Virus record (IMG/VR): IMGVR_UViG_3300031951_000003
Location: 124,001-188,000 of that record
Reading direction: 5' to 3' (one strand)
Length of the DNA stretch: 64,000 nucleotides
This document shows positions 1,442 through 22,729 of the stretch, in pieces (positions within the stretch are counted from its first letter, which is position 1; each line of letters begins with the position of its first letter). The notes below the pieces were generated by a model. The model ran no database searches, was not told the origin of the DNA, and saw only the letters and a program-made list of their open reading frames with translations. The translations under genes and the position numbers were made by a program.

Positions 1442-1834
1442 GGGGAAGTCATGGCAATTGATTGGCGTGTGTAGTTATAGGTGGCACGTAGGAGCTGAGT
1501 TAACTCCTTTATCAACTGATTTGAAAAAACAAATGGCAATACTTTTGCTAAGATGGCTGCTATCGGTTTAATCGCTGAAGAAGCTACTGTTGTTGCTTAA
1601 TTTAAGTCACGACACTCGGGTCGGTTAGGACATTAACCTAGGAACAGAAGTCCAATATACGGGTCACAGGTCAGAGCTCGTTTAAAATAATTCTGAGACC
1701 AAGTTGTTTGTAGGTGGGTTTCTCACATATATCAAACCTAATATTTCGGAACATTGAGAAACAATGTTGTAATAAACGTGTAGTCACTTATAGTTGTCGC
1801 GAACAAGACACGGGTTCGACTCCCGTCTTCTCCA
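1442..1834 (+). ncRNA. ssrA: tmRNA; tag reading frame 1535-1600 (A)GNTFAKMAAIGLIAEEATVVA*
   Basis: Acceptor GGGGAAG/CTTCTCC-A with G3.U70; T-arm GACACGGGTTCGACTCCCGTC; internal Ala-rich tag ORF. Confidence 0.93.
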
Positions 1835-1843
1835 CAGCAGATT

Positions 1844-11237: not shown

Positions 11238-11320
11238 TATCTGTTATTTTCTTCTAAACATTTCGGACAAAGTCCGTCTTTGTCTAAAAGTGTTCCGTGA
11301 ATTCCACAAATATTATTCAT
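11237..11320 (-). CDS. 27-aa zinc-finger microprotein within the tRNA array
   Basis: MNNICGIHGTLLDKDGLCPKCLEENNR; CxxH...CxxC. Confidence 0.55.
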   Translation of the reverse strand: MNNICGIHGTLLDKDGLCPKCLEENNR

Positions 11321-11332
11321 AATAAAAATTTG

Positions 11333-11482: not shown

Positions 11483-11549
11483 TTAAATGATTGTTACACT
11501 TGGTTGTGTTACTTCCTCCTGACACCACTCAGGACTTCAATCATTTTTG

Positions 11550-11631
11550 TGGGAGTAGCTGGACTCGAACCAACGAACTCGAAAGAGGGAAGATTTACAG
11601 TCTTCTGCCATTGCCACTAGGCGATACTCCC
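11550..11631 (-). tRNA. tRNA-Tyr(GTA)
   Basis: Cloverleaf with variable arm; loop CTGTAAA. Confidence 0.93.
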
Positions 11632-11635
11632 ATTA

Positions 11636-11768
11636 AGGAAAGGAGAAGATGGTTGCGTGGACATCTCCTTTTACGATTGGCATTACTCAGGTGTATTTCT
11701 CCCAACTCCGATGATACAGACCGAAATACACTCTCGAGTCATTAGTATCACCATTCCCCAATCAACCT
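11636..11768 (-). ncRNA. Candidate pseudoknotted ncRNA between tRNA-Trp and tRNA-Tyr
   Basis: Nested GATTGG/CCAATC, ACTC/GAGT, GTGTATTTC/GAAATACAC; second hairpin AAAGGAG-ATG/CAT-CTCCTTT; crossing pairs GGTGATAC/GTATCATC and GGTTG/CAACC. Confidence 0.6.
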
Positions 11769-11773
11769 ATTTG

Positions 11774-11846
11774 CACGCACGGTAGGACTCGAACCTACAA
11801 CACCTAGTTTTGGAGACTAGTACTCTACCAATTGAGCTACGCACGC
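11774..11846 (-). tRNA. tRNA-Trp(CCA)
   Basis: Cloverleaf; loop CTCCAAA. Confidence 0.92.
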
Positions 11847-12428: not shown

Positions 12429-12953
12429 TTATCTCTCAAGTTTTTTTATACATTCATCTATTTTATCTCTTAATCTACCACCATACCCGAAGTCACCATC
12501 TACCTGAACGTGTCTCCACATCGGAACTCTTGGTTTCATCCATTTATATTGACCATCAAGTTTCATGTCGTCGATTGAAATCCAATTTGAGATTTTATTA
12601 TCTTTTACCCACTTTGTGATTTCTGCTGCTCTTTCCCACTCAATTGAAGGTCTACTAAGTTTATTCCAAAGGTCCTGATGGGTTGTGATATCTACAATCG
12701 GAGCTGTTACACCATAGTATTGGAAAATACGTTTTAATTGTATAAAACTGAAATGTTTTCTCCAATCCGAACTCACAACTAAACTTGCGTTTGTTTCATC
12801 ACAAATTTTTTGAAGTGCTTGACAATCATCTTCAACCCATGGGTAAGGGATTGTAAAAGTTTTACTGTGTTCGTTCAGCGTAACTCTCCCATCACCCCAA
12901 GTTCCCCATGCCAGTGGTCCATCTACATCAATAAAAATAATTTTACGTCTCAT
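12429..12953 (-). CDS. HAD-domain protein of the Swiss-army-knife RNA-repair type (HAD_SAK_2-like)
   Basis: IIFIDVDGPL, VVSSDWR, WISIDD motifs. Confidence 0.75.
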   Translation of the reverse strand: MRRKIIFIDVDGPLAWGTWGDGRVTLNEHSKTFTIPYPWVEDDCQALQKICDETNASLVVSSDWRKHFSFIQLKRIFQYYGVTAPIVDITTHQDLWNKLSRPSIEWERAAEITKWVKDNKISNWISIDDMKLDGQYKWMKPRVPMWRHVQVDGDFGYGGRLRDKIDECIKKLER

Positions 12954-13432: not shown

Positions 13433-13457
13433 AAGAATTACAAACTTACAACCATTA

Positions 13458-13468
13458 TTTCAAAGAAC
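13458..13468 (-). promoter_or_regulatory. boxA-like antitermination element GTTCTTTGAAA
   Basis: Same word upstream of tmRNA; resembles rrn boxA. Confidence 0.5.
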
Positions 13469-13483
13469 CAAAAACTCCTTAAA

Positions 13484-13522
13484 TAAAAAAACCCCGAACT
13501 TCATTTCTGTAGTCCGAGGTTT
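13484..13522 (-). terminator. Attenuator terminator upstream of Glu..Ser tRNA block
   Basis: AAACCTCGGACT/AGTTCGGGGTTT + T run; 5' arm GGACTACAG can pair instead with CTGTAGTCT in the leader ORF. Confidence 0.85.
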
Positions 13523-13555
13523 GTATATATAACTCTTCAGGAATTATAGGCTATC

Positions 13556-13636
13556 TCATGAGACTACAGCGCGTGTCTTAAACCAACAAATCTCTTGTTG
13601 TTTACTATAGACTTTATTACGCACTATTGTTCTCAT
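13556..13636 (-). CDS. Leader peptide 1, MRTIVRNKVYSKQQEICWFKTRAVVS
   Basis: Follows TATATTTG (13654-13661); 3' end carries the antiterminator strand; codons match the downstream tRNAs. Confidence 0.75.
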   Translation of the reverse strand: MRTIVRNKVYSKQQEICWFKTRAVVS

Positions 13637-13695
13637 TATTATTATAATTACTACAAATATAGTAAATCTCTTTTAAAAATCAAATTATTTTTCTG

Positions 13696-13776: not shown

Positions 13777-13779
13777 ATT

Positions 13780-13995
13780 TTAGTGAGTTCCGTTTGTTAG
13801 AGAAACTCCGTGTTCAAACCCTTTTATGAAATCATTTATTTCTTCTTGGGTCATACTATTATAAACTCTCCCAACAACAAATCCAATTTCATTACCTAAA
13901 TCAGAAATATCGCCGATATAATTAATTTCTTTTTTGTGGTTATCAAATTCATTTAGAATTTTTTCCAAGATTGTATATGTAAACGCTCTAGTCAT
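13780..13995 (-). CDS. Hypothetical protein
   Basis: Start moved to MTRAFTY to avoid overlap with tRNA-Arg. Confidence 0.55.
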   Translation of the reverse strand: MTRAFTYTILEKILNEFDNHKKEINYIGDISDLGNEIGFVVGRVYNSMTQEEINDFIKGFEHGVSLTNGTH

Positions 13996-14007
13996 TTTTT
14001 TAAGTTG

Positions 14008-14212: not shown

Positions 14213-14917
14213 TTAGAACTTTTCTTCCCAAACAGTATCTCTTTCTGTTTCTTCAATATTCATTGTGTGATTTAAGGTTATCTCTTTACGGTCCAAATCA
14301 ATTTCGAAATTACCTTGAGAACCTTCGTTGATTTCCCATCCACCAAAATTATTTTCAAGCATTCTGTATGCGTAGTCTGAAACCACCGCAGGAACAGAAT
14401 CACCATTTGTAAAATCGTCTTCCAAGTAACCAGAGTCACCACTTCCATTGTAGTCAAGTTGAAGGACTCTATCACTAATTTCCTCGTCGTTTTCTAACGT
14501 ATCAAAAAGCTCCATTAAATCCTCATTGTCGTCTTCTTCCAAAGAATGAGTAATAGATTCGGTATTCCCAACATCATAGTAGCTATAGTCATAGGAGATT
14601 GAAATTTCTCTAGTTTTACAATCAATCTCAATCATAACTCTTCCCCAATTGATATCGTCATATTCGGGTTGTTTAATTAGTTCATTTTCACAAACATAAT
14701 AAATGCTTTTCTGAAAAATTGGAATTAATCCTTCAGGAATTTCCGCAACGTAATTATTTGAAAAATGTGTTACATTTTTCCAATCGATATCGTCACAATC
14801 AAAATAAGAGGTATTCATTTCGAATTCGACAAATGCATCTTCCATTCCGATGGAACCTAAATAACGACAGATACGATTTAAATACTTTTTTTCGTCTTTA
14901 GTTAATAAATCTTTCAT
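14213..14917 (-). CDS. DUF6878-like protein
   Basis: YNGSGDSG...GWEINEGSQG C-terminal motif. Confidence 0.6.
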   Translation of the reverse strand: MKDLLTKDEKKYLNRICRYLGSIGMEDAFVEFEMNTSYFDCDDIDWKNVTHFSNNYVAEIPEGLIPIFQKSIYYVCENELIKQPEYDDINWGRVMIEIDCKTREISISYDYSYYDVGNTESITHSLEEDDNEDLMELFDTLENDEEISDRVLQLDYNGSGDSGYLEDDFTNGDSVPAVVSDYAYRMLENNFGGWEINEGSQGNFEIDLDRKEITLNHTMNIEETERDTVWEEKF

Positions 14918-14930
14918 GATAATATAAATA

Positions 14931-15284
14931 TCAATCTTCGAACTCTAATTTTATTGTTTTCAACATCCAAGATGGCCTTGTGTTCGATACCATGTTGTTT
15001 ATCCATTCTTTTGCGGAAGGGATATAATTATTACAATCTTCCTTTACGTGTTGTTCACCAACATATCGGGTGTAGACTGTCTTACCATCACTGTTTTTGA
15101 ATTCAGGACCAAACCTCTTTTCCATTTCGAAAATCCCTTCCGAATGATGTCTAAACATTCTGTGTAAAGAATCCCCGAACCAACCTTTGGTCTCATCCAT
15201 CCACTCATGTAAATGAATATAATCCTCAGGTTTTCCACCAAACTTTTTAGCGGAACTTTTTGCATGTAAATTAGGGTGTGACAT
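14931..15284 (-). CDS. DUF6915-like protein
   Basis: MSHPNLHAKSSAKKFGGKPEDY..H.WMDETK..HRMFRHHSEGIF..EQHVKED; start reassigned. Confidence 0.7.
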   Translation of the reverse strand: MSHPNLHAKSSAKKFGGKPEDYIHLHEWMDETKGWFGDSLHRMFRHHSEGIFEMEKRFGPEFKNSDGKTVYTRYVGEQHVKEDCNNYIPSAKEWINNMVSNTRPSWMLKTIKLEFED

Positions 15285-15870
15285 TTCTCCAAGATTCTTT
15301 TCGATAACCAAATAAATGAAATTGCTCCTCAAAAATTTTATAAACGTAGTTGGATACTTCTTCATCATAAAATTCCTTCCATGGTTTCCTTTTTTCATTC
15401 ATTTGTCCTTCAAATTCTGTTTTGAATTTGTTATTACTTATGAACTCATCAAAGGTTTTCTTGATATCGGAATTCTCCAAATCCAAAAATTTCAAAGACT
15501 TGAGGTCATTCTCCAAATTTTCCTGTTTTATGAATTTATCAAATGGTCTACCCAAAATTTCATAATTTTTATGATATTGTAATTGATAATCATTAATTAT
15601 TTTCGGGTTTTCGAGGGATTCGAAAACCCAAGTTTTGAAATGTTTTTGAAAATCATTCAAATGATGTGAATACAAATAAAACAGGGATACTAGTCTAGAG
15701 TAAGGGTTTCTAACGTTTGATACGAAGAAATAGTCTTTTTTGTTGGAATCAAATGTAAAATGATGGTCAAAAGTTTGAAAACCCATAACACGAAGAAGTT
15801 CTTTAGTTGAACGTGTTCCTGTTCTTTGTGGGGTAAACCAATAAACTTTGTGTTTCTCTGAGATATGCAT
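15271..15870 (-). CDS. Sulfotransferase family 2-like protein
   Basis: PQRTGTRS and VRNPYSRLVS motifs; paralog of 7533-8153. Confidence 0.75.
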   Translation of the reverse strand: MHISEKHKVYWFTPQRTGTRSTKELLRVMGFQTFDHHFTFDSNKKDYFFVSNVRNPYSRLVSLFYLYSHHLNDFQKHFKTWVFESLENPKIINDYQLQYHKNYEILGRPFDKFIKQENLENDLKSLKFLDLENSDIKKTFDEFISNNKFKTEFEGQMNEKRKPWKEFYDEEVSNYVYKIFEEQFHLFGYRKESWRNVTP

Positions 15871-16432: not shown

Positions 16433-16436
16433 ATAT

Positions 16437-16538
16437 TCCGTTTTTCCTTCACATTTAGCCCAATCACCAGTGAAACAATGATTGGATTTTGGATGGAGAA
16501 GTCTGCAAGGATTTCTCCCATTAGACCGTTACCACGGA
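16437..16538 (-). ncRNA. Candidate structured RNA between tRNA-Asp and tRNA-Gly
   Basis: Closing TCCGT/ACGGA; internal GGAGAA/TTCTCC and CCAATCA/TGATTGG. Confidence 0.4.
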
Positions 16539-16551
16539 CAAACTCTACCAG

Positions 16552-16625: not shown

Positions 16626-16630
16626 ATTTG

Positions 16631-16817
16631 AACAGGTTTTTTGTGTCCTTTTACACATCATGACCAACATATTACTACATTGGTGGTTACATTTTCGTCT
16701 TTGGTTAATTACTCCTGACTTATAGTAAACACTACCCTCACCGCTCTGATACCGCGAATCAAGACGGCGTCTTTGGGATTCATATACCGTGGGGTTCCAC
16801 CACAGTCTTCACCTGTT
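16631..16817 (-). ncRNA. Candidate ~190-nt multi-stem ncRNA between tRNA-Asn and tRNA-Asp
   Basis: Ends pair AACAGGT/ACCTGTT; stems CTGTGG/CCACGG, CGTCTT/AAGACG, CCAA/TTGG, TGTGT/ACACA. Confidence 0.5.
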
Positions 16818-16820
16818 TTG

Positions 16821-19464: not shown

Positions 19465-21135
19465 ATGAGGGTATTAGGATTTTCTGTCGGACACGACAAA
19501 GGTGCTGTTATTGTTGAAAATGGAAAAGTCTTGATTGGAATTACTCAAGAAAGAATTTCAAGAATCAAACATGATGGAGCACATCAAGGTGGATTAATTC
19601 CTGCCGAATCTATAAGATATTGTCTTGAAAATTCAGGATATACTTTTAGAGATATCGATTTATTTGTCTACAGCACAACTGAAATTGTTGATGACGTTCA
19701 AAAAAAGTTTATCGAAGAATTTCAGTTTGACCCTACGGGTAAATTCGAGTTTTTACCTCATCATTTGGCCCACGCATATTCTTCTTTTTTTAGTTCAGGA
19801 TTCGATGATGCCGTTGTGGTTGTTGCAGACGCATCGGGTAGTATTTTGAATGAAAAAAATAAATTACCTGAGTGGTATCCGAAAGTTAGTAGGAAAGGTC
19901 TCAATCACGAAGAAGATTGGACAGAAGCAATTTCAATTTATCATTTTAATAAAAATGATTACAAAGAGGTTTATAAGAAATGGATAAAATATCCTGTTCC
20001 GATTGATACTAACGAAGATGTTTCTGTCGGAACCGTTTACTCTGAAGGTTCACTTCAATTAATTTATGAACCCAATACCAATTCTTGGCCTGCAGGTAAA
20101 CTGATGGGACTTGCGTCATATGCTGACAAGGACATAGTCGAGGAAGCTCCACATTATATTGTTGAAACAGAAGATGGAGATATTTTCATTCCAAATAATA
20201 GAATATATCCCAAAGTGACATATGATTCAGATTTTTTCTCAAGAGCTTGTGTTGCTGGAATATATCAAAGGGAACAAGAAAGGGTATCTCTAATGTTAGC
20301 GAAGAAAGCAAAGGAATTGACCGATTCTGAAAATATTTGCGTGGCAGGTGGGTCTTTCCTTAATTGTAATTCTAACGAAAAAATCCTCAACTCAGGATTG
20401 TTTGAGGGTTGTTACTTCATACCTCCCTCTGACGATAGTGGAATCCCTTTAGGGTGCGCCTGGTATGGTTATCAACTTATGAGTCCGATTGAAAAAAATA
20501 ATTTTCTTTCTCCTTACATAGGTAAAAATTATTCTAACAATGATATTGTTTCAGCAATAAACCAATACCCAAATTTATATCATGAAAGATTTGATGATTT
20601 TGACGAACTTGTTGATAAAGTCTCACATTGGTTAACTCAAAATAGGGTCATAGGCTGGTTTCAAGACCAATCTGAAATTGGACCTAGAGCTCTTGGTAAT
20701 CGTTCAATCTTAGCATCACCTATCAACAAATGGATGACAGGTCACATTAATTCAGACATCAAAAAAAGAGAATGGTATAGACCGTTTGCACCCGCCGTGT
20801 TATTTGAACACCAAAGTGAAATTTTTGATTCTAATGTTTTTTCTCCATATATGTTGGTTACGACTAACGTAAAAGAATCTTGGAGAGATAAAATACCTGC
20901 AGTAACTCACATTGACGGTTCCGCTAGACATCAATCGGTTTCAGAAAAATCTAATTATAAATTTTATAAATTAATCGAGAGTTTTTATAACAAAACAGGA
21001 GTTCCAGTTTTACTCAACACGAGTTTCAATGGCCCTCATGAACCAATTGTTGAAACTCCAAAGAATGCAATTGACACCATGTTAAGTTGTAAACTCGATT
21101 ACTTAGTAATAGGAAATTATTTAATCAAAAGATAG
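19465..21135 (+). CDS. Carbamoyltransferase (NodU/CmcH family)
   Basis: HD..A, ERISRIKH, HHLAHA, GKLMGLASY, GPRALGNRSILA, RPFAP, LLNTSFN..EPIVE. Confidence 0.93.
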   Translation: MRVLGFSVGHDKGAVIVENGKVLIGITQERISRIKHDGAHQGGLIPAESIRYCLENSGYTFRDIDLFVYSTTEIVDDVQKKFIEEFQFDPTGKFEFLPHHLAHAYSSFFSSGFDDAVVVVADASGSILNEKNKLPEWYPKVSRKGLNHEEDWTEAISIYHFNKNDYKEVYKKWIKYPVPIDTNEDVSVGTVYSEGSLQLIYEPNTNSWPAGKLMGLASYADKDIVEEAPHYIVETEDGDIFIPNNRIYPKVTYDSDFFSRACVAGIYQREQERVSLMLAKKAKELTDSENICVAGGSFLNCNSNEKILNSGLFEGCYFIPPSDDSGIPLGCAWYGYQLMSPIEKNNFLSPYIGKNYSNNDIVSAINQYPNLYHERFDDFDELVDKVSHWLTQNRVIGWFQDQSEIGPRALGNRSILASPINKWMTGHINSDIKKREWYRPFAPAVLFEHQSEIFDSNVFSPYMLVTTNVKESWRDKIPAVTHIDGSARHQSVSEKSNYKFYKLIESFYNKTGVPVLLNTSFNGPHEPIVETPKNAIDTMLSCKLDYLVIGNYLIKR

Positions 21136-21136
21136 T

Positions 21137-22729
21137 ATGAGCACGATTTATGGTTTTTTTGGTGGTTCTCATAGTCCATCCGCGTGTTTAATTAGAAATG
21201 GAAAGATTGTATCATGTATAGAAGAAGAAAGATTAACCAGAATTAAGGCTGGTGACAACTTCGACAGTTTTCCAGAATTATCCTCAGAAGAAATTCAAAA
21301 ATACACAGGTCTTAATGTTCACGATGCTGATTATAGGGTTTTTGTTGAGCCGGTAATCGATGCGTTCGCAAAAAAATTGACCAAGGATAATTTTGAGAGA
21401 GTTGGTCATCACGATGCTCATTGCTATGGTTCTTATTTTACAAGTGGTATGGATGGAAAAGTTTTAAGTATTTCATACGACGGTGGAGGAGACAAAACCG
21501 TAATGAAAGTCTACCTTTGTGAAGATGGTAAAATGAATTTGGCATATTCTTATGATTTTGCAACAACGGGAAGTATACCTCATCTTTGGGCATTCAGTGT
21601 GACCTCAATTAGAGGATATAACGAGAATGGAGAGAGCATTTGGAAAATGTGTAAAGACGAAGGGAAACTTATGGGAATGGCACCTGATGGGTTTTACGAT
21701 GAGAGGATATATAAAATTCTGAATTCAATAATCGATTACAAAGACTTCAAATTTTTCCCATCGAATACGGGTGCGAAAGCTAGATTTGTTGTAGACACAA
21801 TGTTCAGGAAAGGTTATTTCGACTCACAAGAGAAACTTCAGGTTTTTTCGTTTAACTTACAAAAATTAACTGAAGACCTTTTCCTTAATTTTTTAGACGA
21901 CCTTCACACTAGATTTCCCGATTATAAAAAATTATGTTTTTCTGGTGGTTTGTTTGCCAACGTAAAATTAAATCAAAAAATTAATCAACTACCTTGGGTT
22001 GAGGAAATATATATTGTTCCACCTATGGGAGACGAAGGGTTAAGCTTAGGTGCATGTATAAAGAAAGCAGTAGACTTGGGTGAAATCACAAAACCATTCA
22101 AATTGGATAATGTTTTTTTTGGTAAAGAGTATGATGATGACCAAATTTCATTGATTAGTCAAAAATATAATTTTGAGAAAAAGATATATAACCCTTCTGA
22201 AATCGCTAAGAATATTGATGAGGGTGAAATTATCGGTTGGTTTCAACACGGATTTGAATTTGGTCCACGAGCCTTGGGTGGTAGAAGTATTCTTATGAGA
22301 CCAACAAGCTCAGACACTCATAGTAAATTAAACAAAAGGTTGAAAAGACATGATTCGATGCCATTTGCACCTATTGTAATGTCAGAATATTTTGATGAAA
22401 TTTTCTTTGAAACAAAGTCAAAATACTCCGCAGAATTTATGACTATTTGTTATCAAACTAAAGAGAATTGGATTGAAAAAATACCTGCGGTAATCCAAAA
22501 ATCAGATAAGACTGCGAGACCTCAGATTGTAAAAAGAGAGAAGAACTACAAATTTTGGGAAATACTTGATGAATACTATAAAATTTCAAATATACCTGTT
22601 TTGTTAAATACTTCTTTCAACACTCACAATGAACCAATTGTAGATAACCCCGAACAAGCCTTTTCTAAATTACAAGATAAAACTTTAGATAAATTAGTTA
22701 TTGGAAATTATGTTTACACAAATAGGTGA
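21137..22729 (+). CDS. Carbamoyltransferase (NodU/CmcH family), second copy
   Basis: EEERLTRIK, HHDAH, DGGGD, EGKLMGMA, GPRALGGRS, LLNTSFN. Confidence 0.93.
   Translation: MSTIYGFFGGSHSPSACLIRNGKIVSCIEEERLTRIKAGDNFDSFPELSSEEIQKYTGLNVHDADYRVFVEPVIDAFAKKLTKDNFERVGHHDAHCYGSYFTSGMDGKVLSISYDGGGDKTVMKVYLCEDGKMNLAYSYDFATTGSIPHLWAFSVTSIRGYNENGESIWKMCKDEGKLMGMAPDGFYDERIYKILNSIIDYKDFKFFPSNTGAKARFVVDTMFRKGYFDSQEKLQVFSFNLQKLTEDLFLNFLDDLHTRFPDYKKLCFSGGLFANVKLNQKINQLPWVEEIYIVPPMGDEGLSLGACIKKAVDLGEITKPFKLDNVFFGKEYDDDQISLISQKYNFEKKIYNPSEIAKNIDEGEIIGWFQHGFEFGPRALGGRSILMRPTSSDTHSKLNKRLKRHDSMPFAPIVMSEYFDEIFFETKSKYSAEFMTICYQTKENWIEKIPAVIQKSDKTARPQIVKREKNYKFWEILDEYYKISNIPVLLNTSFNTHNEPIVDNPEQAFSKLQDKTLDKLVIGNYVYTNR

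What the first reader, a model, noticed from the sequence alone, without database searches (positions are those of the whole stretch)
11636..11768. Double-pseudoknot candidate ncRNA inside the tRNA array
Seen: two hairpin domains plus two potential crossing helices (GGUGAUAC/GUAUCAUC; 5' GGUUG with CAACC). This density of pairing suggests a ribozyme or a protein-binding RNA. I could not fit it to HDV/theta, hammerhead, twister or pistol consensus by eye.
Basis: seen in the sequence. Interest (0 to 1): 0.62.

Follow-up and report, generated by a model that had tools for sequence, protein, structure and literature searches.

The report
New structured RNA in phage tRNA array
The 133-base stretch between two tRNA genes of this 321-kb phage is a real, strongly conserved folded RNA gene of a family absent from the RNA-family library searched and from sequenced cultured phages; one of its two proposed knots holds up, the other does not, and its job is still unknown.

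Summary
Window 11636-11768 (minus strand) lies between tRNA-Trp and tRNA-Tyr in the tRNA array of a 321-kb phage with terminal repeats. It is one member of a family of at least 126 distinct sequences on uncultivated aquatic phage contigs. No Rfam 15 family matches it, even at E<=10. No GenBank phage record matches it.

Covariation confirms both hairpins and the crossing helix GGUGAUAC/GUAUCAUC, so one H-type pseudoknot is real. The second crossing helix (GGUUG/CAACC) is not supported. Where G6 changes, the compensating change is in the 3' tail (C136), not in CAACC. The ends therefore pair as a closing helix, P0.

The fold is a three-way junction of P0, P1 and P2 with a near-invariant P2 loop. 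The pseudoknot is a swappable module at the tip of P1. Minimal relatives of 56-74 nt lack it.

The element evolves as slowly as its neighbouring tRNAs. Six genomes of 245-321 kb carry one copy each. It occupies a tRNA-like slot, a few nt from the flanking tRNAs. RNA-library contigs cover it but not the flanking ORFs.

My best reading is a stand-alone stable small RNA, cut out by tRNA-processing enzymes, that acts in trans through the invariant core. Its partner is unknown. Nothing supports self-cleavage.

The parts
11766..11768 (-). P0 5' strand (A5 G6 G7), the start of the conserved unit
   Evidence: Pairs with C135 C136 U137. G6->A is matched by C136->U in the L237, L431 and L435 lineages. 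The helix extends to 7-8 bp with different sequences in several lineages.
11764..11765 (-). J0/1 linker U8 U9. U9 probably pairs with G99.
   Evidence: Both are invariant in all 117 aligned members, though the retrieval filter required them. U9 faces R99 as UG in 33 and UA in 31 sequences.
11758..11763 (-). P1 5' strand, GAUUGG (nt 10-15)
   Evidence: Pairs with CCAAUC. 99.9% paired, and 4 of 6 pairs have compensatory double changes.
11753..11757 (-). Internal-loop strand GGAAU (nt 16-20). Facing AGUAAUG, it forms a possible loop-E / sarcin-ricin-like motif.
   Evidence: Seen in the sequence. Positions 17 and 88 co-vary as G/U in 69 sequences and A/A in 38. The motif assignment is inferred.
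11745..11752 (-). Helix A 5' strand, GGUGAUAC (nt 21-28)
   Evidence: Crossing helix, confirmed: 89.7% paired and 78 double-change cells on an unfitted alignment.
11723..11739 (-). Helix B 5' strand (nt 34-50, interrupted by bulges at G38 and A41)
   Evidence: Covariation in both subgroups.
11710..11717 (-). Helix A 3' strand, GUAUCAUC (nt 56-63). It lies inside the loop of hairpin B.
   Evidence: Its position makes A/B an H-type pseudoknot.
11700..11709 (-). Conserved pseudoknot loop 3, GGAGUUGGGA (nt 64-73)
   Evidence: GGAGUU is nearly invariant in the 64 type-1 members. A related CGGUUAGAAA is present in type 2.
11685..11699 (-). Helix B 3' strand (nt 74-88)
11681..11687 (-). AGUAAUG (nt 86-92), the conserved strand next to P1. 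It overlaps the last pairs of helix B.
   Evidence: Invariant A, G, A, A and G in the alignments.
11675..11680 (-). P1 3' strand, CCAAUC (nt 93-98)
11672..11674 (-). J1/2 linker G99 U100 A101 (RUA)
   Evidence: U100 and A101 are invariant. Position 99 is R.
11665..11671 (-). P2 5' strand, AAAGGAG (nt 102-108)
   Evidence: Pairs with CUCCUUU. The central pairs covary as GC, UA, CG and AU.
11646..11664 (-). P2 loop, AU-GUCCAC-GC-AACC-AUCUU (nt 109-127). It is the most conserved single-stranded part and the presumed functional surface.
   Evidence: GUCCAC and ACCAUC are kept in all 44 sequences retrieved with a pattern that did not include them.
11639..11645 (-). P2 3' strand, CUCCUUU (nt 128-134). 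It runs into the P0 3' strand with no linker.
11636..11638 (-). P0 3' strand (C135 C136 U137), the end of the conserved unit. tRNA-Tyr starts 4 nt further on, at 11631.
11773..11846 (-). Upstream tRNA-Trp (CCA). Its 3' end lies a few nt before the element.
   Evidence: ARAGORN and Rfam.
11549..11631 (-). Downstream tRNA-Tyr (GUA). RNase P cleavage at its 5' end would set the element's 3' end.
   Evidence: ARAGORN and Rfam. An RNA-library contig joins the element to this tRNA and stops at the tRNA 3' end.

Best explanation
This is a stand-alone gene for a structured small RNA of about 133 nt. It is carried as a non-tRNA passenger in the phage's tRNA array.

Shown: it is co-oriented with the tRNAs, lies a few nt from each neighbour, and is present in RNA libraries. 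It folds as a three-way junction:
- P0 is made by its own 5' and 3' ends.
- P1 carries an exchangeable tip module, here an H-type pseudoknot.
- P2 has a 19-nt, almost invariant loop.

Inferred: the array transcript is cut by the host tRNA-processing enzymes. RNase P cuts at the 5' end of the next tRNA. RNase Z, or RNase E plus exonucleases, cuts at the 3' end of the previous one. This releases the RNA with P0 sealing its ends. It then acts in trans, as a binding platform for a conserved cellular or phage partner through the invariant P2 loop and junction. The partner is unknown. Because the RNA sits among tRNAs and a tmRNA, a component of the translation or tRNA-handling machinery is the most likely target.
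For: - Real RNA under selection: helices P1, P2, A and B covary, and G.U pairs are tolerated only on the minus strand.
- It evolves like the neighbouring tRNAs. It is 93-97% identical where the adjacent ORF is 73-83% identical at the DNA level.
- Discrete molecule: conservation starts and stops sharply at A5 and U137. The two ends pair with each other. There is one compensatory change, and the helix extends to 7-8 bp with different sequences in several lineages.
- tRNA-style slot: in 125 contexts, a tRNA ends 2-6 nt upstream in 47 and a tRNA starts 4-7 nt downstream in 67.
- The core is sufficient: members of 56-74 nt lack the pseudoknot module.
- One copy per genome in six genomes of 245-321 kb.
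- No protein gene is shared by most loci within 5 kb; the best family is in 38 of 160.
- Expression: metatranscriptome contigs cover the element and the tRNAs but almost none of the flanking ORFs. One 197-nt contig with 2 differences joins the element to tRNA-Tyr and ends at the tRNA 3' end.
- Precedent: T4 places the stable RNAs rnaD and rnaC right after tRNA-Arg.
Against: - No ends were mapped. Only assembled contigs were available, not raw reads, so processing and stability are inferred.
- No partner was identified, and no target complementarity was found.
- P0 is only 3 bp in most members, including this one.
- The family was collected with sequence patterns, so the apparent invariance of the pattern positions is partly by construction.
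- A close relative (L008) lacks the element, so it is dispensable or recently gained.
Confidence: 0.5

Rival explanations
1. tRNA/tmRNA-shaped mimic. This is a special case of a trans-acting RNA. The core would descend from, or imitate, a tRNA-like domain and act as a decoy or adaptor for a tRNA-binding factor, such as a host anticodon or acceptor-end nuclease, a modification enzyme, or SmpB/EF-Tu.
For: - The topology parallels a tRNA or a tmRNA tRNA-like domain. The terminal stem reaches 7 bp, a 2-nt U-rich linker follows, then one arm, a short linker, and a second arm whose 3' strand runs straight into the terminal stem.
- Minimal members are about tRNA-sized (56-74 nt).
- It sits in tRNA slots, and in five loci directly after a 96-nt tRNA-like gene.
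- It shares short words with the phage's own tmRNA ends: UUGAUUGG, GGGGAA and UCUUCUCC.
Against: - Neither ARAGORN nor the Rfam tRNA and tmRNA models match it, even at E<=10.
- It has no T-loop consensus, no 7-nt anticodon-like loop, and no discriminator-CCA.
- P0 is 3 bp in most members.
- The GGGGAA/UUCUCC 'acceptor' pairing is not maintained when P2 covaries.
- The shared words are short and were not tested for significance.
Confidence: 0.15
2. Cis-acting processing or expression element. The structure would serve the flanking tRNAs, for example by guiding or insulating RNase P/RNase Z cleavage, or by protecting the precursor, and would have no function once released.
For: It is tightly spaced from flanking tRNAs. 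The commonest neighbours are tRNA-Trp (27) and tRNA-Tyr (37). An element-tRNA-Tyr joint molecule is present in an RNA library.
Against: - 58 of 125 contexts have no tRNA within 8 nt downstream, and 78 have none within 6 nt upstream.
- It occurs after ORFs and in tandem with a second element.
- The same tRNA-Trp/tRNA-Tyr pair works with a 5-nt spacer in L008.
- A self-closing terminal helix and about 45 near-invariant nucleotides are more than a spacer needs.
Confidence: 0.12
3. Self-cleaving ribozyme. The fold would cut the array transcript at one of its own ends, as HDV-like theta ribozymes do next to phage tRNAs.
For: - It has a compact pseudoknotted fold with conserved unpaired nucleotides, next to tRNAs in a phage. 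This is the setting in which theta ribozymes were described (PMC10879173).
- Tandem elements without an intervening tRNA would need some other cut.
Against: - No ribozyme family of Rfam 15 matches at E<=10 on the 156-nt stretch.
- The HDV nested double pseudoknot cannot be drawn on the covariation-supported helices.
- The junction strands (UU / RUA / none) exclude a hammerhead core.
- The pseudoknot is dispensable (minimal forms).
- The 5' and 3' ends pair with each other.
- Far more positions are sequence-invariant than in known small ribozymes, though the sampling is biased.
Confidence: 0.08
4. Ligand-binding aptamer without an expression platform. It would be a small-molecule or ion 'sponge', or a sensor expressed at tRNA-like levels.
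For: Its architecture is typical of aptamers: conserved junction and loops, covarying stems, and a tolerated insertion at a stem tip.
Against: No downstream ORF or terminator is consistently linked. No known riboswitch model matches. No ligand is suggested by context.
Confidence: 0.07
5. Not an RNA gene: a small ORF or a DNA-level site.
For: Mechanical ORFs overlap the element on the plus strand (11491-11745 and 11657-11785). An AUG follows a GGAG on the minus strand.
Against: - Homologue lengths differ by non-multiples of three (121-138 nt).
- Changes are compensatory in helices, not synonymous.
- The 'start' varies among AUG, UUG and UCG.
- G.U pairs fit only the minus-strand RNA.
Confidence: 0.02

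Closest known systems
Phage T4 small stable RNAs rnaC (species 1, 139 nt) and rnaD (species 2, 119 nt) in the tRNA cluster
   Same: They are non-tRNA RNAs of 119-139 nt, placed head-to-tail right behind a tRNA gene. The order is tRNA-Arg, 1 nt, rnaD, 6 nt, rnaC. They share the tRNAs' strand. Their function is still unknown (own knowledge). Tandem pairs also occur in the present family.
   Different: The family covariance model finds no similarity (best 10 bits, E 0.11, and not on rnaC or rnaD). rnaC ends in a tRNA-like T-arm/acceptor (read). The present RNA has none.
HDV-like theta ribozymes next to phage tRNAs (PMC10879173)
   Same: They are phage-borne, lie directly beside tRNA genes, and are pseudoknotted.
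   Different: No Rfam HDV-type model matches. The proven helices give an H-type pseudoknot on an arm of a three-way junction, not the nested P1/P1.1/P2/P3/P4 fold. No cleavage is indicated.
tRNA, and the tRNA-like domain of tmRNA
   Same: A terminal stem is made by the two ends, a 2-nt U-rich linker follows, and the second arm's 3' strand runs straight into the terminal stem. Minimal forms are roughly tRNA-sized. The RNA sits in tRNA slots of the array.
   Different: It has no cloverleaf, T-loop, anticodon loop or CCA end. The tRNA and tmRNA models do not match.
GOLLD and ROOL large ornate RNAs (PMC12286853)
   Same: They are structured RNAs of unknown function, often in phages or prophages near tRNA genes.
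   Different: They are 4-6 times larger (own knowledge). Their Rfam models do not match.
UG27 reverse-transcriptase ncRNA arrays of phages (bioRxiv 10.64898/2026.09.22.753630)
   Same: They are phage-encoded units of about 135-167 nt, with a basal hairpin and a pseudoknot, sometimes repeated.
   Different: Those units are sequence-diverse and sit beside an RT with two accessory genes. This genome has no RT. This family is sequence-conserved and usually single-copy.

Membership tests
HDV-like / theta ribozyme | Match to an HDV-type covariance model (Rfam HDV_ribozyme, HDV-F-prausnitzii, drz families) | tested here: not met
   There is no hit at E<=10 on 6.2 kb or on the 156-nt stretch alone.
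HDV-like / theta ribozyme | Nested double pseudoknot in the order P1-P2-P3-P3'-P1'-P4-P4'-P2', with P1.1 | tested here: not met
   The covariation-supported helices run in the order P0, P1, A, B, A', B', P1', P2, P2', P0'. No P3 or P4 lies between the crossing strands.
HDV-like / theta ribozyme | Site-specific self-cleavage at the 5' edge of P1 | not testable with these tools
   This needs an in vitro cleavage assay or raw-read end mapping. Only assembled contigs were served.
Hammerhead ribozyme | Three-way junction with the CUGANGA, GAAA and UH core strands | tested here: not met
   The junction strands are UU, RUA and none. The CUGAUGA found in some members lies inside covarying helix B and is absent from others. 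There is no Rfam hit.
Twister, twister-sister, pistol, hatchet | Match to the family covariance model | tested here: not met
   No hit at E<=10.
tRNA | Cloverleaf recognised by ARAGORN or Rfam RF00005 | tested here: not met
   The 24 tRNAs of the window are found, but nothing in 11632-11772.
tmRNA tRNA-like domain | Acceptor stem plus T-arm with a GUUCRANNC loop and a 3' ACCA | tested here: not met
   There is no T-loop and no ACCA in the sequence. RF00023 matches only at 1442-1837.
T4 rnaC/rnaD stable RNAs | Sequence or structure homology | tested here: not met
   Model R2 on the T4 tRNA region with filters off scores at most 10 bits, and not on the two genes.
T4 rnaC/rnaD stable RNAs | Stable RNA excised from a tRNA precursor transcript | tested here: inconclusive
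   Slot and spacing fit, and RNA-library contigs cover the element. No ends or abundance could be measured.
phi29-type pRNA | Match to Rfam Phage_pRNA and a position beside packaging genes | tested here: not met
   No Rfam hit. The neighbours are tRNAs, a HAD_SAK_2 protein and an M23 peptidase.
UG27 RT-associated ncRNA | An adjacent reverse transcriptase | tested here: not met
   PF00078 is absent from the complete 321-kb genome.
Y RNA / YrlA | A Ro60 (TROVE) partner and a match to the YrlA model | tested here: not met
   PF05731 is absent. The weak YrlA hits fall on tRNA pairs only.

The most novel reading that the evidence does not exclude
The invariant three-way-junction core (P0/P1/P2 with the GUCCAC...ACCAUCUU loop) would be a new functional RNA fold: a new class of ligand-binding 'sponge' or sensor, a new small ribozyme, or a tRNA-shaped decoy against host tRNA-targeting immunity. 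Jumbo phages would express it at tRNA-like levels by hiding it in their tRNA arrays.
Probability: 0.15. Interest if true: 0.85.

Novelty: new variant of a known kind. Interest (0 to 1): 0.6.

Why it matters
Phage tRNA arrays are usually read as lists of tRNAs. This work shows that a clade of large aquatic phages carries in them a further RNA gene, conserved as strongly as the tRNAs. Its fold is well defined and supported by covariation, and no current RNA-family model recognises it.

It is a concrete candidate for a new RNA function at the phage-host translation or defence interface. It is also a modern parallel to the still unexplained T4 species 1 and 2 RNAs.

The core tolerates inserts from 3 to about 90 nt at one stem tip, so it may be useful as an expression scaffold.

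Other spacers of the same array also fold well, so the array may hold several unannotated RNAs.

Tried and rejected
- Rfam at gathering and at E<=10, on the window, the array and the element alone: only tRNAs and tmRNA, plus one chance snoRNA hit on the opposite strand.
- Single-sequence folding: not better than shuffles.
- blastn against 50,697 GenBank phage records: tRNA matches only, and nothing for the element alone at E<=1.
- Strict pattern in one genome per prokaryote species: only two short MAG contigs.
- Linked protein partner: none within 5 kb. Neighbours are syntenic phage genes: M23 peptidase, DUF6878, HAD_SAK_2, DUF5856, PD-(D/E)XK.
- RT, CCA-adding enzyme and Ro60 in the genome: all absent.
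- SD/anti-SD reading of AAAGGAG/CUCCUUU: rejected, because the central pairs covary to GUAG, GCAG, GGGG, GAGG and GAUG.
- Small ORF starting at the AUG in the P2 loop: rejected (start not conserved, changes are compensatory).
- Extra copies in the window or genome: none. No divergent copies in 96 loci.
- Mutual-information scan for tertiary pairs: only subtype-linked signals.
- Hammerhead core in 'CUGAUGA...GAAA' of some members: rejected.
- SRL, SRP-Alu and RNase P CR-I resemblances recalled from memory: not backed by any model hit, so dropped.
- Literature searches and two papers read found no description. The supplement of PMC10690425 is not held.
- One collection scan failed for technical reasons.
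- Two 5'-variant scans returned mostly chance matches and had to be filtered.
- PHROGs on ten large ORFs gave no lineage assignment.

Full report
**Setting.** The window is bases 124001-188000 of a 321,139-bp IMG/VR virus record with direct terminal repeats, rated complete. It carries 24 tRNA genes and a tmRNA. Twenty-three tRNAs lie on the minus strand between 10989 and 16972.

The finding (11636-11768) fills the gap between tRNA-Trp (11773-11846) and tRNA-Tyr (11549-11631). I number the RNA from window 11772 (nt 1), so nt i is window 11773-i.

**Known families and chance.** No Rfam 15 family matches the gap. This holds at curated thresholds, at E<=10 on the 6.2-kb array, and at E<=10 on the 156-nt stretch alone.

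The nested minimum-energy fold of the single sequence is not better than shuffles (z = -0.85). On this sequence alone the observation could be chance. Relatives decide it.

**Relatives.** I used the neighbouring 182-aa ORF to fetch 30 related loci. The element is present in 11 of them. It is 93-97% identical where that ORF is 73-83% identical at the DNA level, which matches the flanking tRNAs. One close relative (L008) has tRNA-Trp and tRNA-Tyr only 5 nt apart and lacks the element.

Together they hold at least 117 distinct elements, and 126 with the later variants.

A strict pattern found only two short MAG contigs among one genome per prokaryote species. blastn finds nothing in 50,697 GenBank phage records. 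Five further genomes of 245-317 kb each hold one copy, as does this one.

Caveat: members were collected with sequence patterns, so invariance at the pattern positions is partly by construction. The P2 loop is still invariant in the 44 sequences fetched with a pattern that excludes it.

**Structure.** The shared scaffold consists of:
- 5' A-GG-UU;
- P1, GAUUGG/CCAAUC;
- the linker RUA;
- P2, AAAGNNG/CNNCUUU, with the loop NN-GUCCAC-NN-(A/C)CC-AUCUU;
- the tail CCU.

On 117 sequences P1 is 99.9% paired, and 4 of its 6 pairs have double changes. P2 is 99.8% paired, and its two central pairs run through GC, UA, CG and AU. No shuffle or slid control comes near.

Between the P1 strands sits a variable insert. 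In 'type 1' (64 sequences, including this window) the insert is an H-type pseudoknot.
- Helix A (GGUGAUAC/GUAUCAUC here) is 89.7% paired, against 69.2% in shuffles. It has 78 double-change cells against 22, on a MAFFT alignment not fitted to any structure.
- Helix B, whose loop holds the 3' strand of A, is 94.2% paired (56 double-change cells) in one subgroup and 89.1% (32) in the other. That alignment was fitted to A, not to B.

'Type 2' members carry other inserts, often a CUUUAACUGUAGAAAGGGC hairpin. Members of 56-74 nt have only a short loop. The pseudoknot is therefore a peripheral module, and the three-helix core is the constant part.

**The second crossing helix.** GGUUG/CAACC shows no covariation. 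U8 faces C in all 53 type-2 members. U9 pairs with R99 as an extension of P1.

I searched for variants at the guanines and at both candidate partners. The covariance model confirmed four variant lineages as members, at 76-105 bits.
- In three of them G6 is A and the 3' tail reads CUU instead of CCU, while C122 of CAACC is unchanged. Their flanks form a 7-8-bp terminal helix, AAGAAAG/CUUUCUU.
- The fourth has a different 7-bp terminal helix, AAAGGAG/CUCCUUU. Its minimum-energy fold is a plain three-way junction.
- No member with C122 changed exists in the collection.

The three G6->A lineages share one scaffold variant, so this is probably a single evolutionary event. The support for P0 is therefore real but thin. 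Longer terminal helices are only modestly enriched over a flank-swap control: 15 of at least 6 bp observed, about 8.6 expected.

I conclude that the 5' AGG pairs with the 3' CCU as a nested closing helix, P0. The RNA has one pseudoknot, not two.

**Context and expression.** I examined 125 distinct contexts.
- A tRNA or tRNA-like gene ends 2-6 nt before GGUU in 47 of them (27 are tRNA-Trp).
- A tRNA starts 4-7 nt after CCU in 67 of them (37 are tRNA-Tyr).
- The rest follow ORFs, other small RNAs, or a second element in tandem.

No protein family is shared by most loci within 5 kb. The genome has no reverse transcriptase, CCA-adding enzyme or Ro60.

Only assembled contigs of RNA libraries were available. 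Contigs from lake, freshwater and marine metatranscriptomes cover the element and the tRNAs but almost none of the flanking ORFs. A 197-nt contig with 2 differences runs from element nt 29 through tRNA-Tyr and stops at the tRNA 3' end. This fits transcription as part of the tRNA precursor. It does not show ends or abundance.

**Interpretation.** The sharp edges of conservation, the pairing of the two ends, and the tRNA-like spacing all point one way. So do single-copy status, tRNA-like evolutionary rate, and the lack of a linked ORF. The element is best read as a stand-alone small RNA released by the tRNA-processing enzymes and acting in trans through its invariant core. Processing and trans action are inferred, not shown.

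The closest precedent is T4. There rnaD (119 nt) and rnaC (139 nt) follow tRNA-Arg at 1 and 6 nt. The family model sees no homology to them.

The core's topology recalls a tRNA or a tmRNA tRNA-like domain. It has a terminal stem, a UU linker, one arm, a short linker, and a second arm continuous with the terminal stem. It fails every defining test for those families.

A ribozyme reading has no support. No model matches, the HDV and hammerhead topologies are excluded, and the pseudoknot is dispensable. Only an assay can exclude it.

**Verdict.** The 'structured ncRNA' reading is right. 'Double pseudoknot' and 'ribozyme' are not supported.

The family is new to Rfam 15 and was not found in the literature I could search. 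It may be among the unnamed candidates predicted from IMG/VR in PMC10690425, whose supplement is not held.

Noticed in passing
window 11483-11548 (-): The 66-nt spacer between tRNA-Tyr and tRNA-Met folds into a closed two-hairpin structure (MFE -17.9 kcal/mol, z = -3.06). It is 97% conserved in L006. It is probably another small RNA of the array.
   Followed up: partly
window 11238-11331 (-); also gaps 13433-13694, 13777-14006, 16433-16550, 16626-16819: Other long gaps in the tRNA array. The 94-nt gap folds well (z = -3.29). The 118-nt gap does not stand out (z = -0.81). None has an Rfam match above chance.
   Followed up: partly
L006 5049-5139 (also L007, L018, L039, L053, L057, L068, L072, L083): A conserved unit of about 90 nt is inserted between tRNA-Trp and the element in some relatives. 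It has a terminal stem CUUCAG.../...CUGAAG and the word GAUUCCUCGGAGCUGGGAG. It has no Rfam match.
   Followed up: no
L133 5423-5518 (-) and the same gene in L127, L137, L152, L170: A 96-nt tRNA-like gene lies directly upstream of a type-2 element. It has an 8-bp acceptor stem (CUGUAGAG/CUCUACAG) and a long extra arm ending in GUCCAC. ARAGORN calls it tRNA-Asp(gtc) in one locus and nothing in the others. Its acceptor 3' strand is complementary to the element's conserved hairpin loop, CUGUAGA.
   Followed up: partly
L042, L051, L058, L060, L168: about 85 nt upstream of the type-2 element: Another conserved unit with a terminal stem ACAACUACC.../...GGUAGUUUGU precedes tandem elements.
   Followed up: no
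window 1442-1835 (+): A phage-encoded tmRNA (Rfam 76 bits) carries the unusual tag AEEATVVA. Its ends share the words UUGAUUGG, GGGGAA and UCUUCUCC with the element. The significance of these shared words was not tested.
   Followed up: partly
window 12429-12953 (-): An ORF with a HAD domain of 'Swiss Army Knife' RNA-repair proteins (PF18143, E 9e-20) sits inside the tRNA array. A related gene lies near the element in 25 loci.
   Followed up: partly
window 14213-15870 (-): ORFs with DUF6878, DUF6915 and a weak sulfotransferase match are interleaved with the tRNA blocks.
   Followed up: no
window 19465-22729 (+): Two adjacent Nol-like carbamoyltransferase genes (phrog_1601, E 2e-105 and 2e-87).
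   Followed up: no
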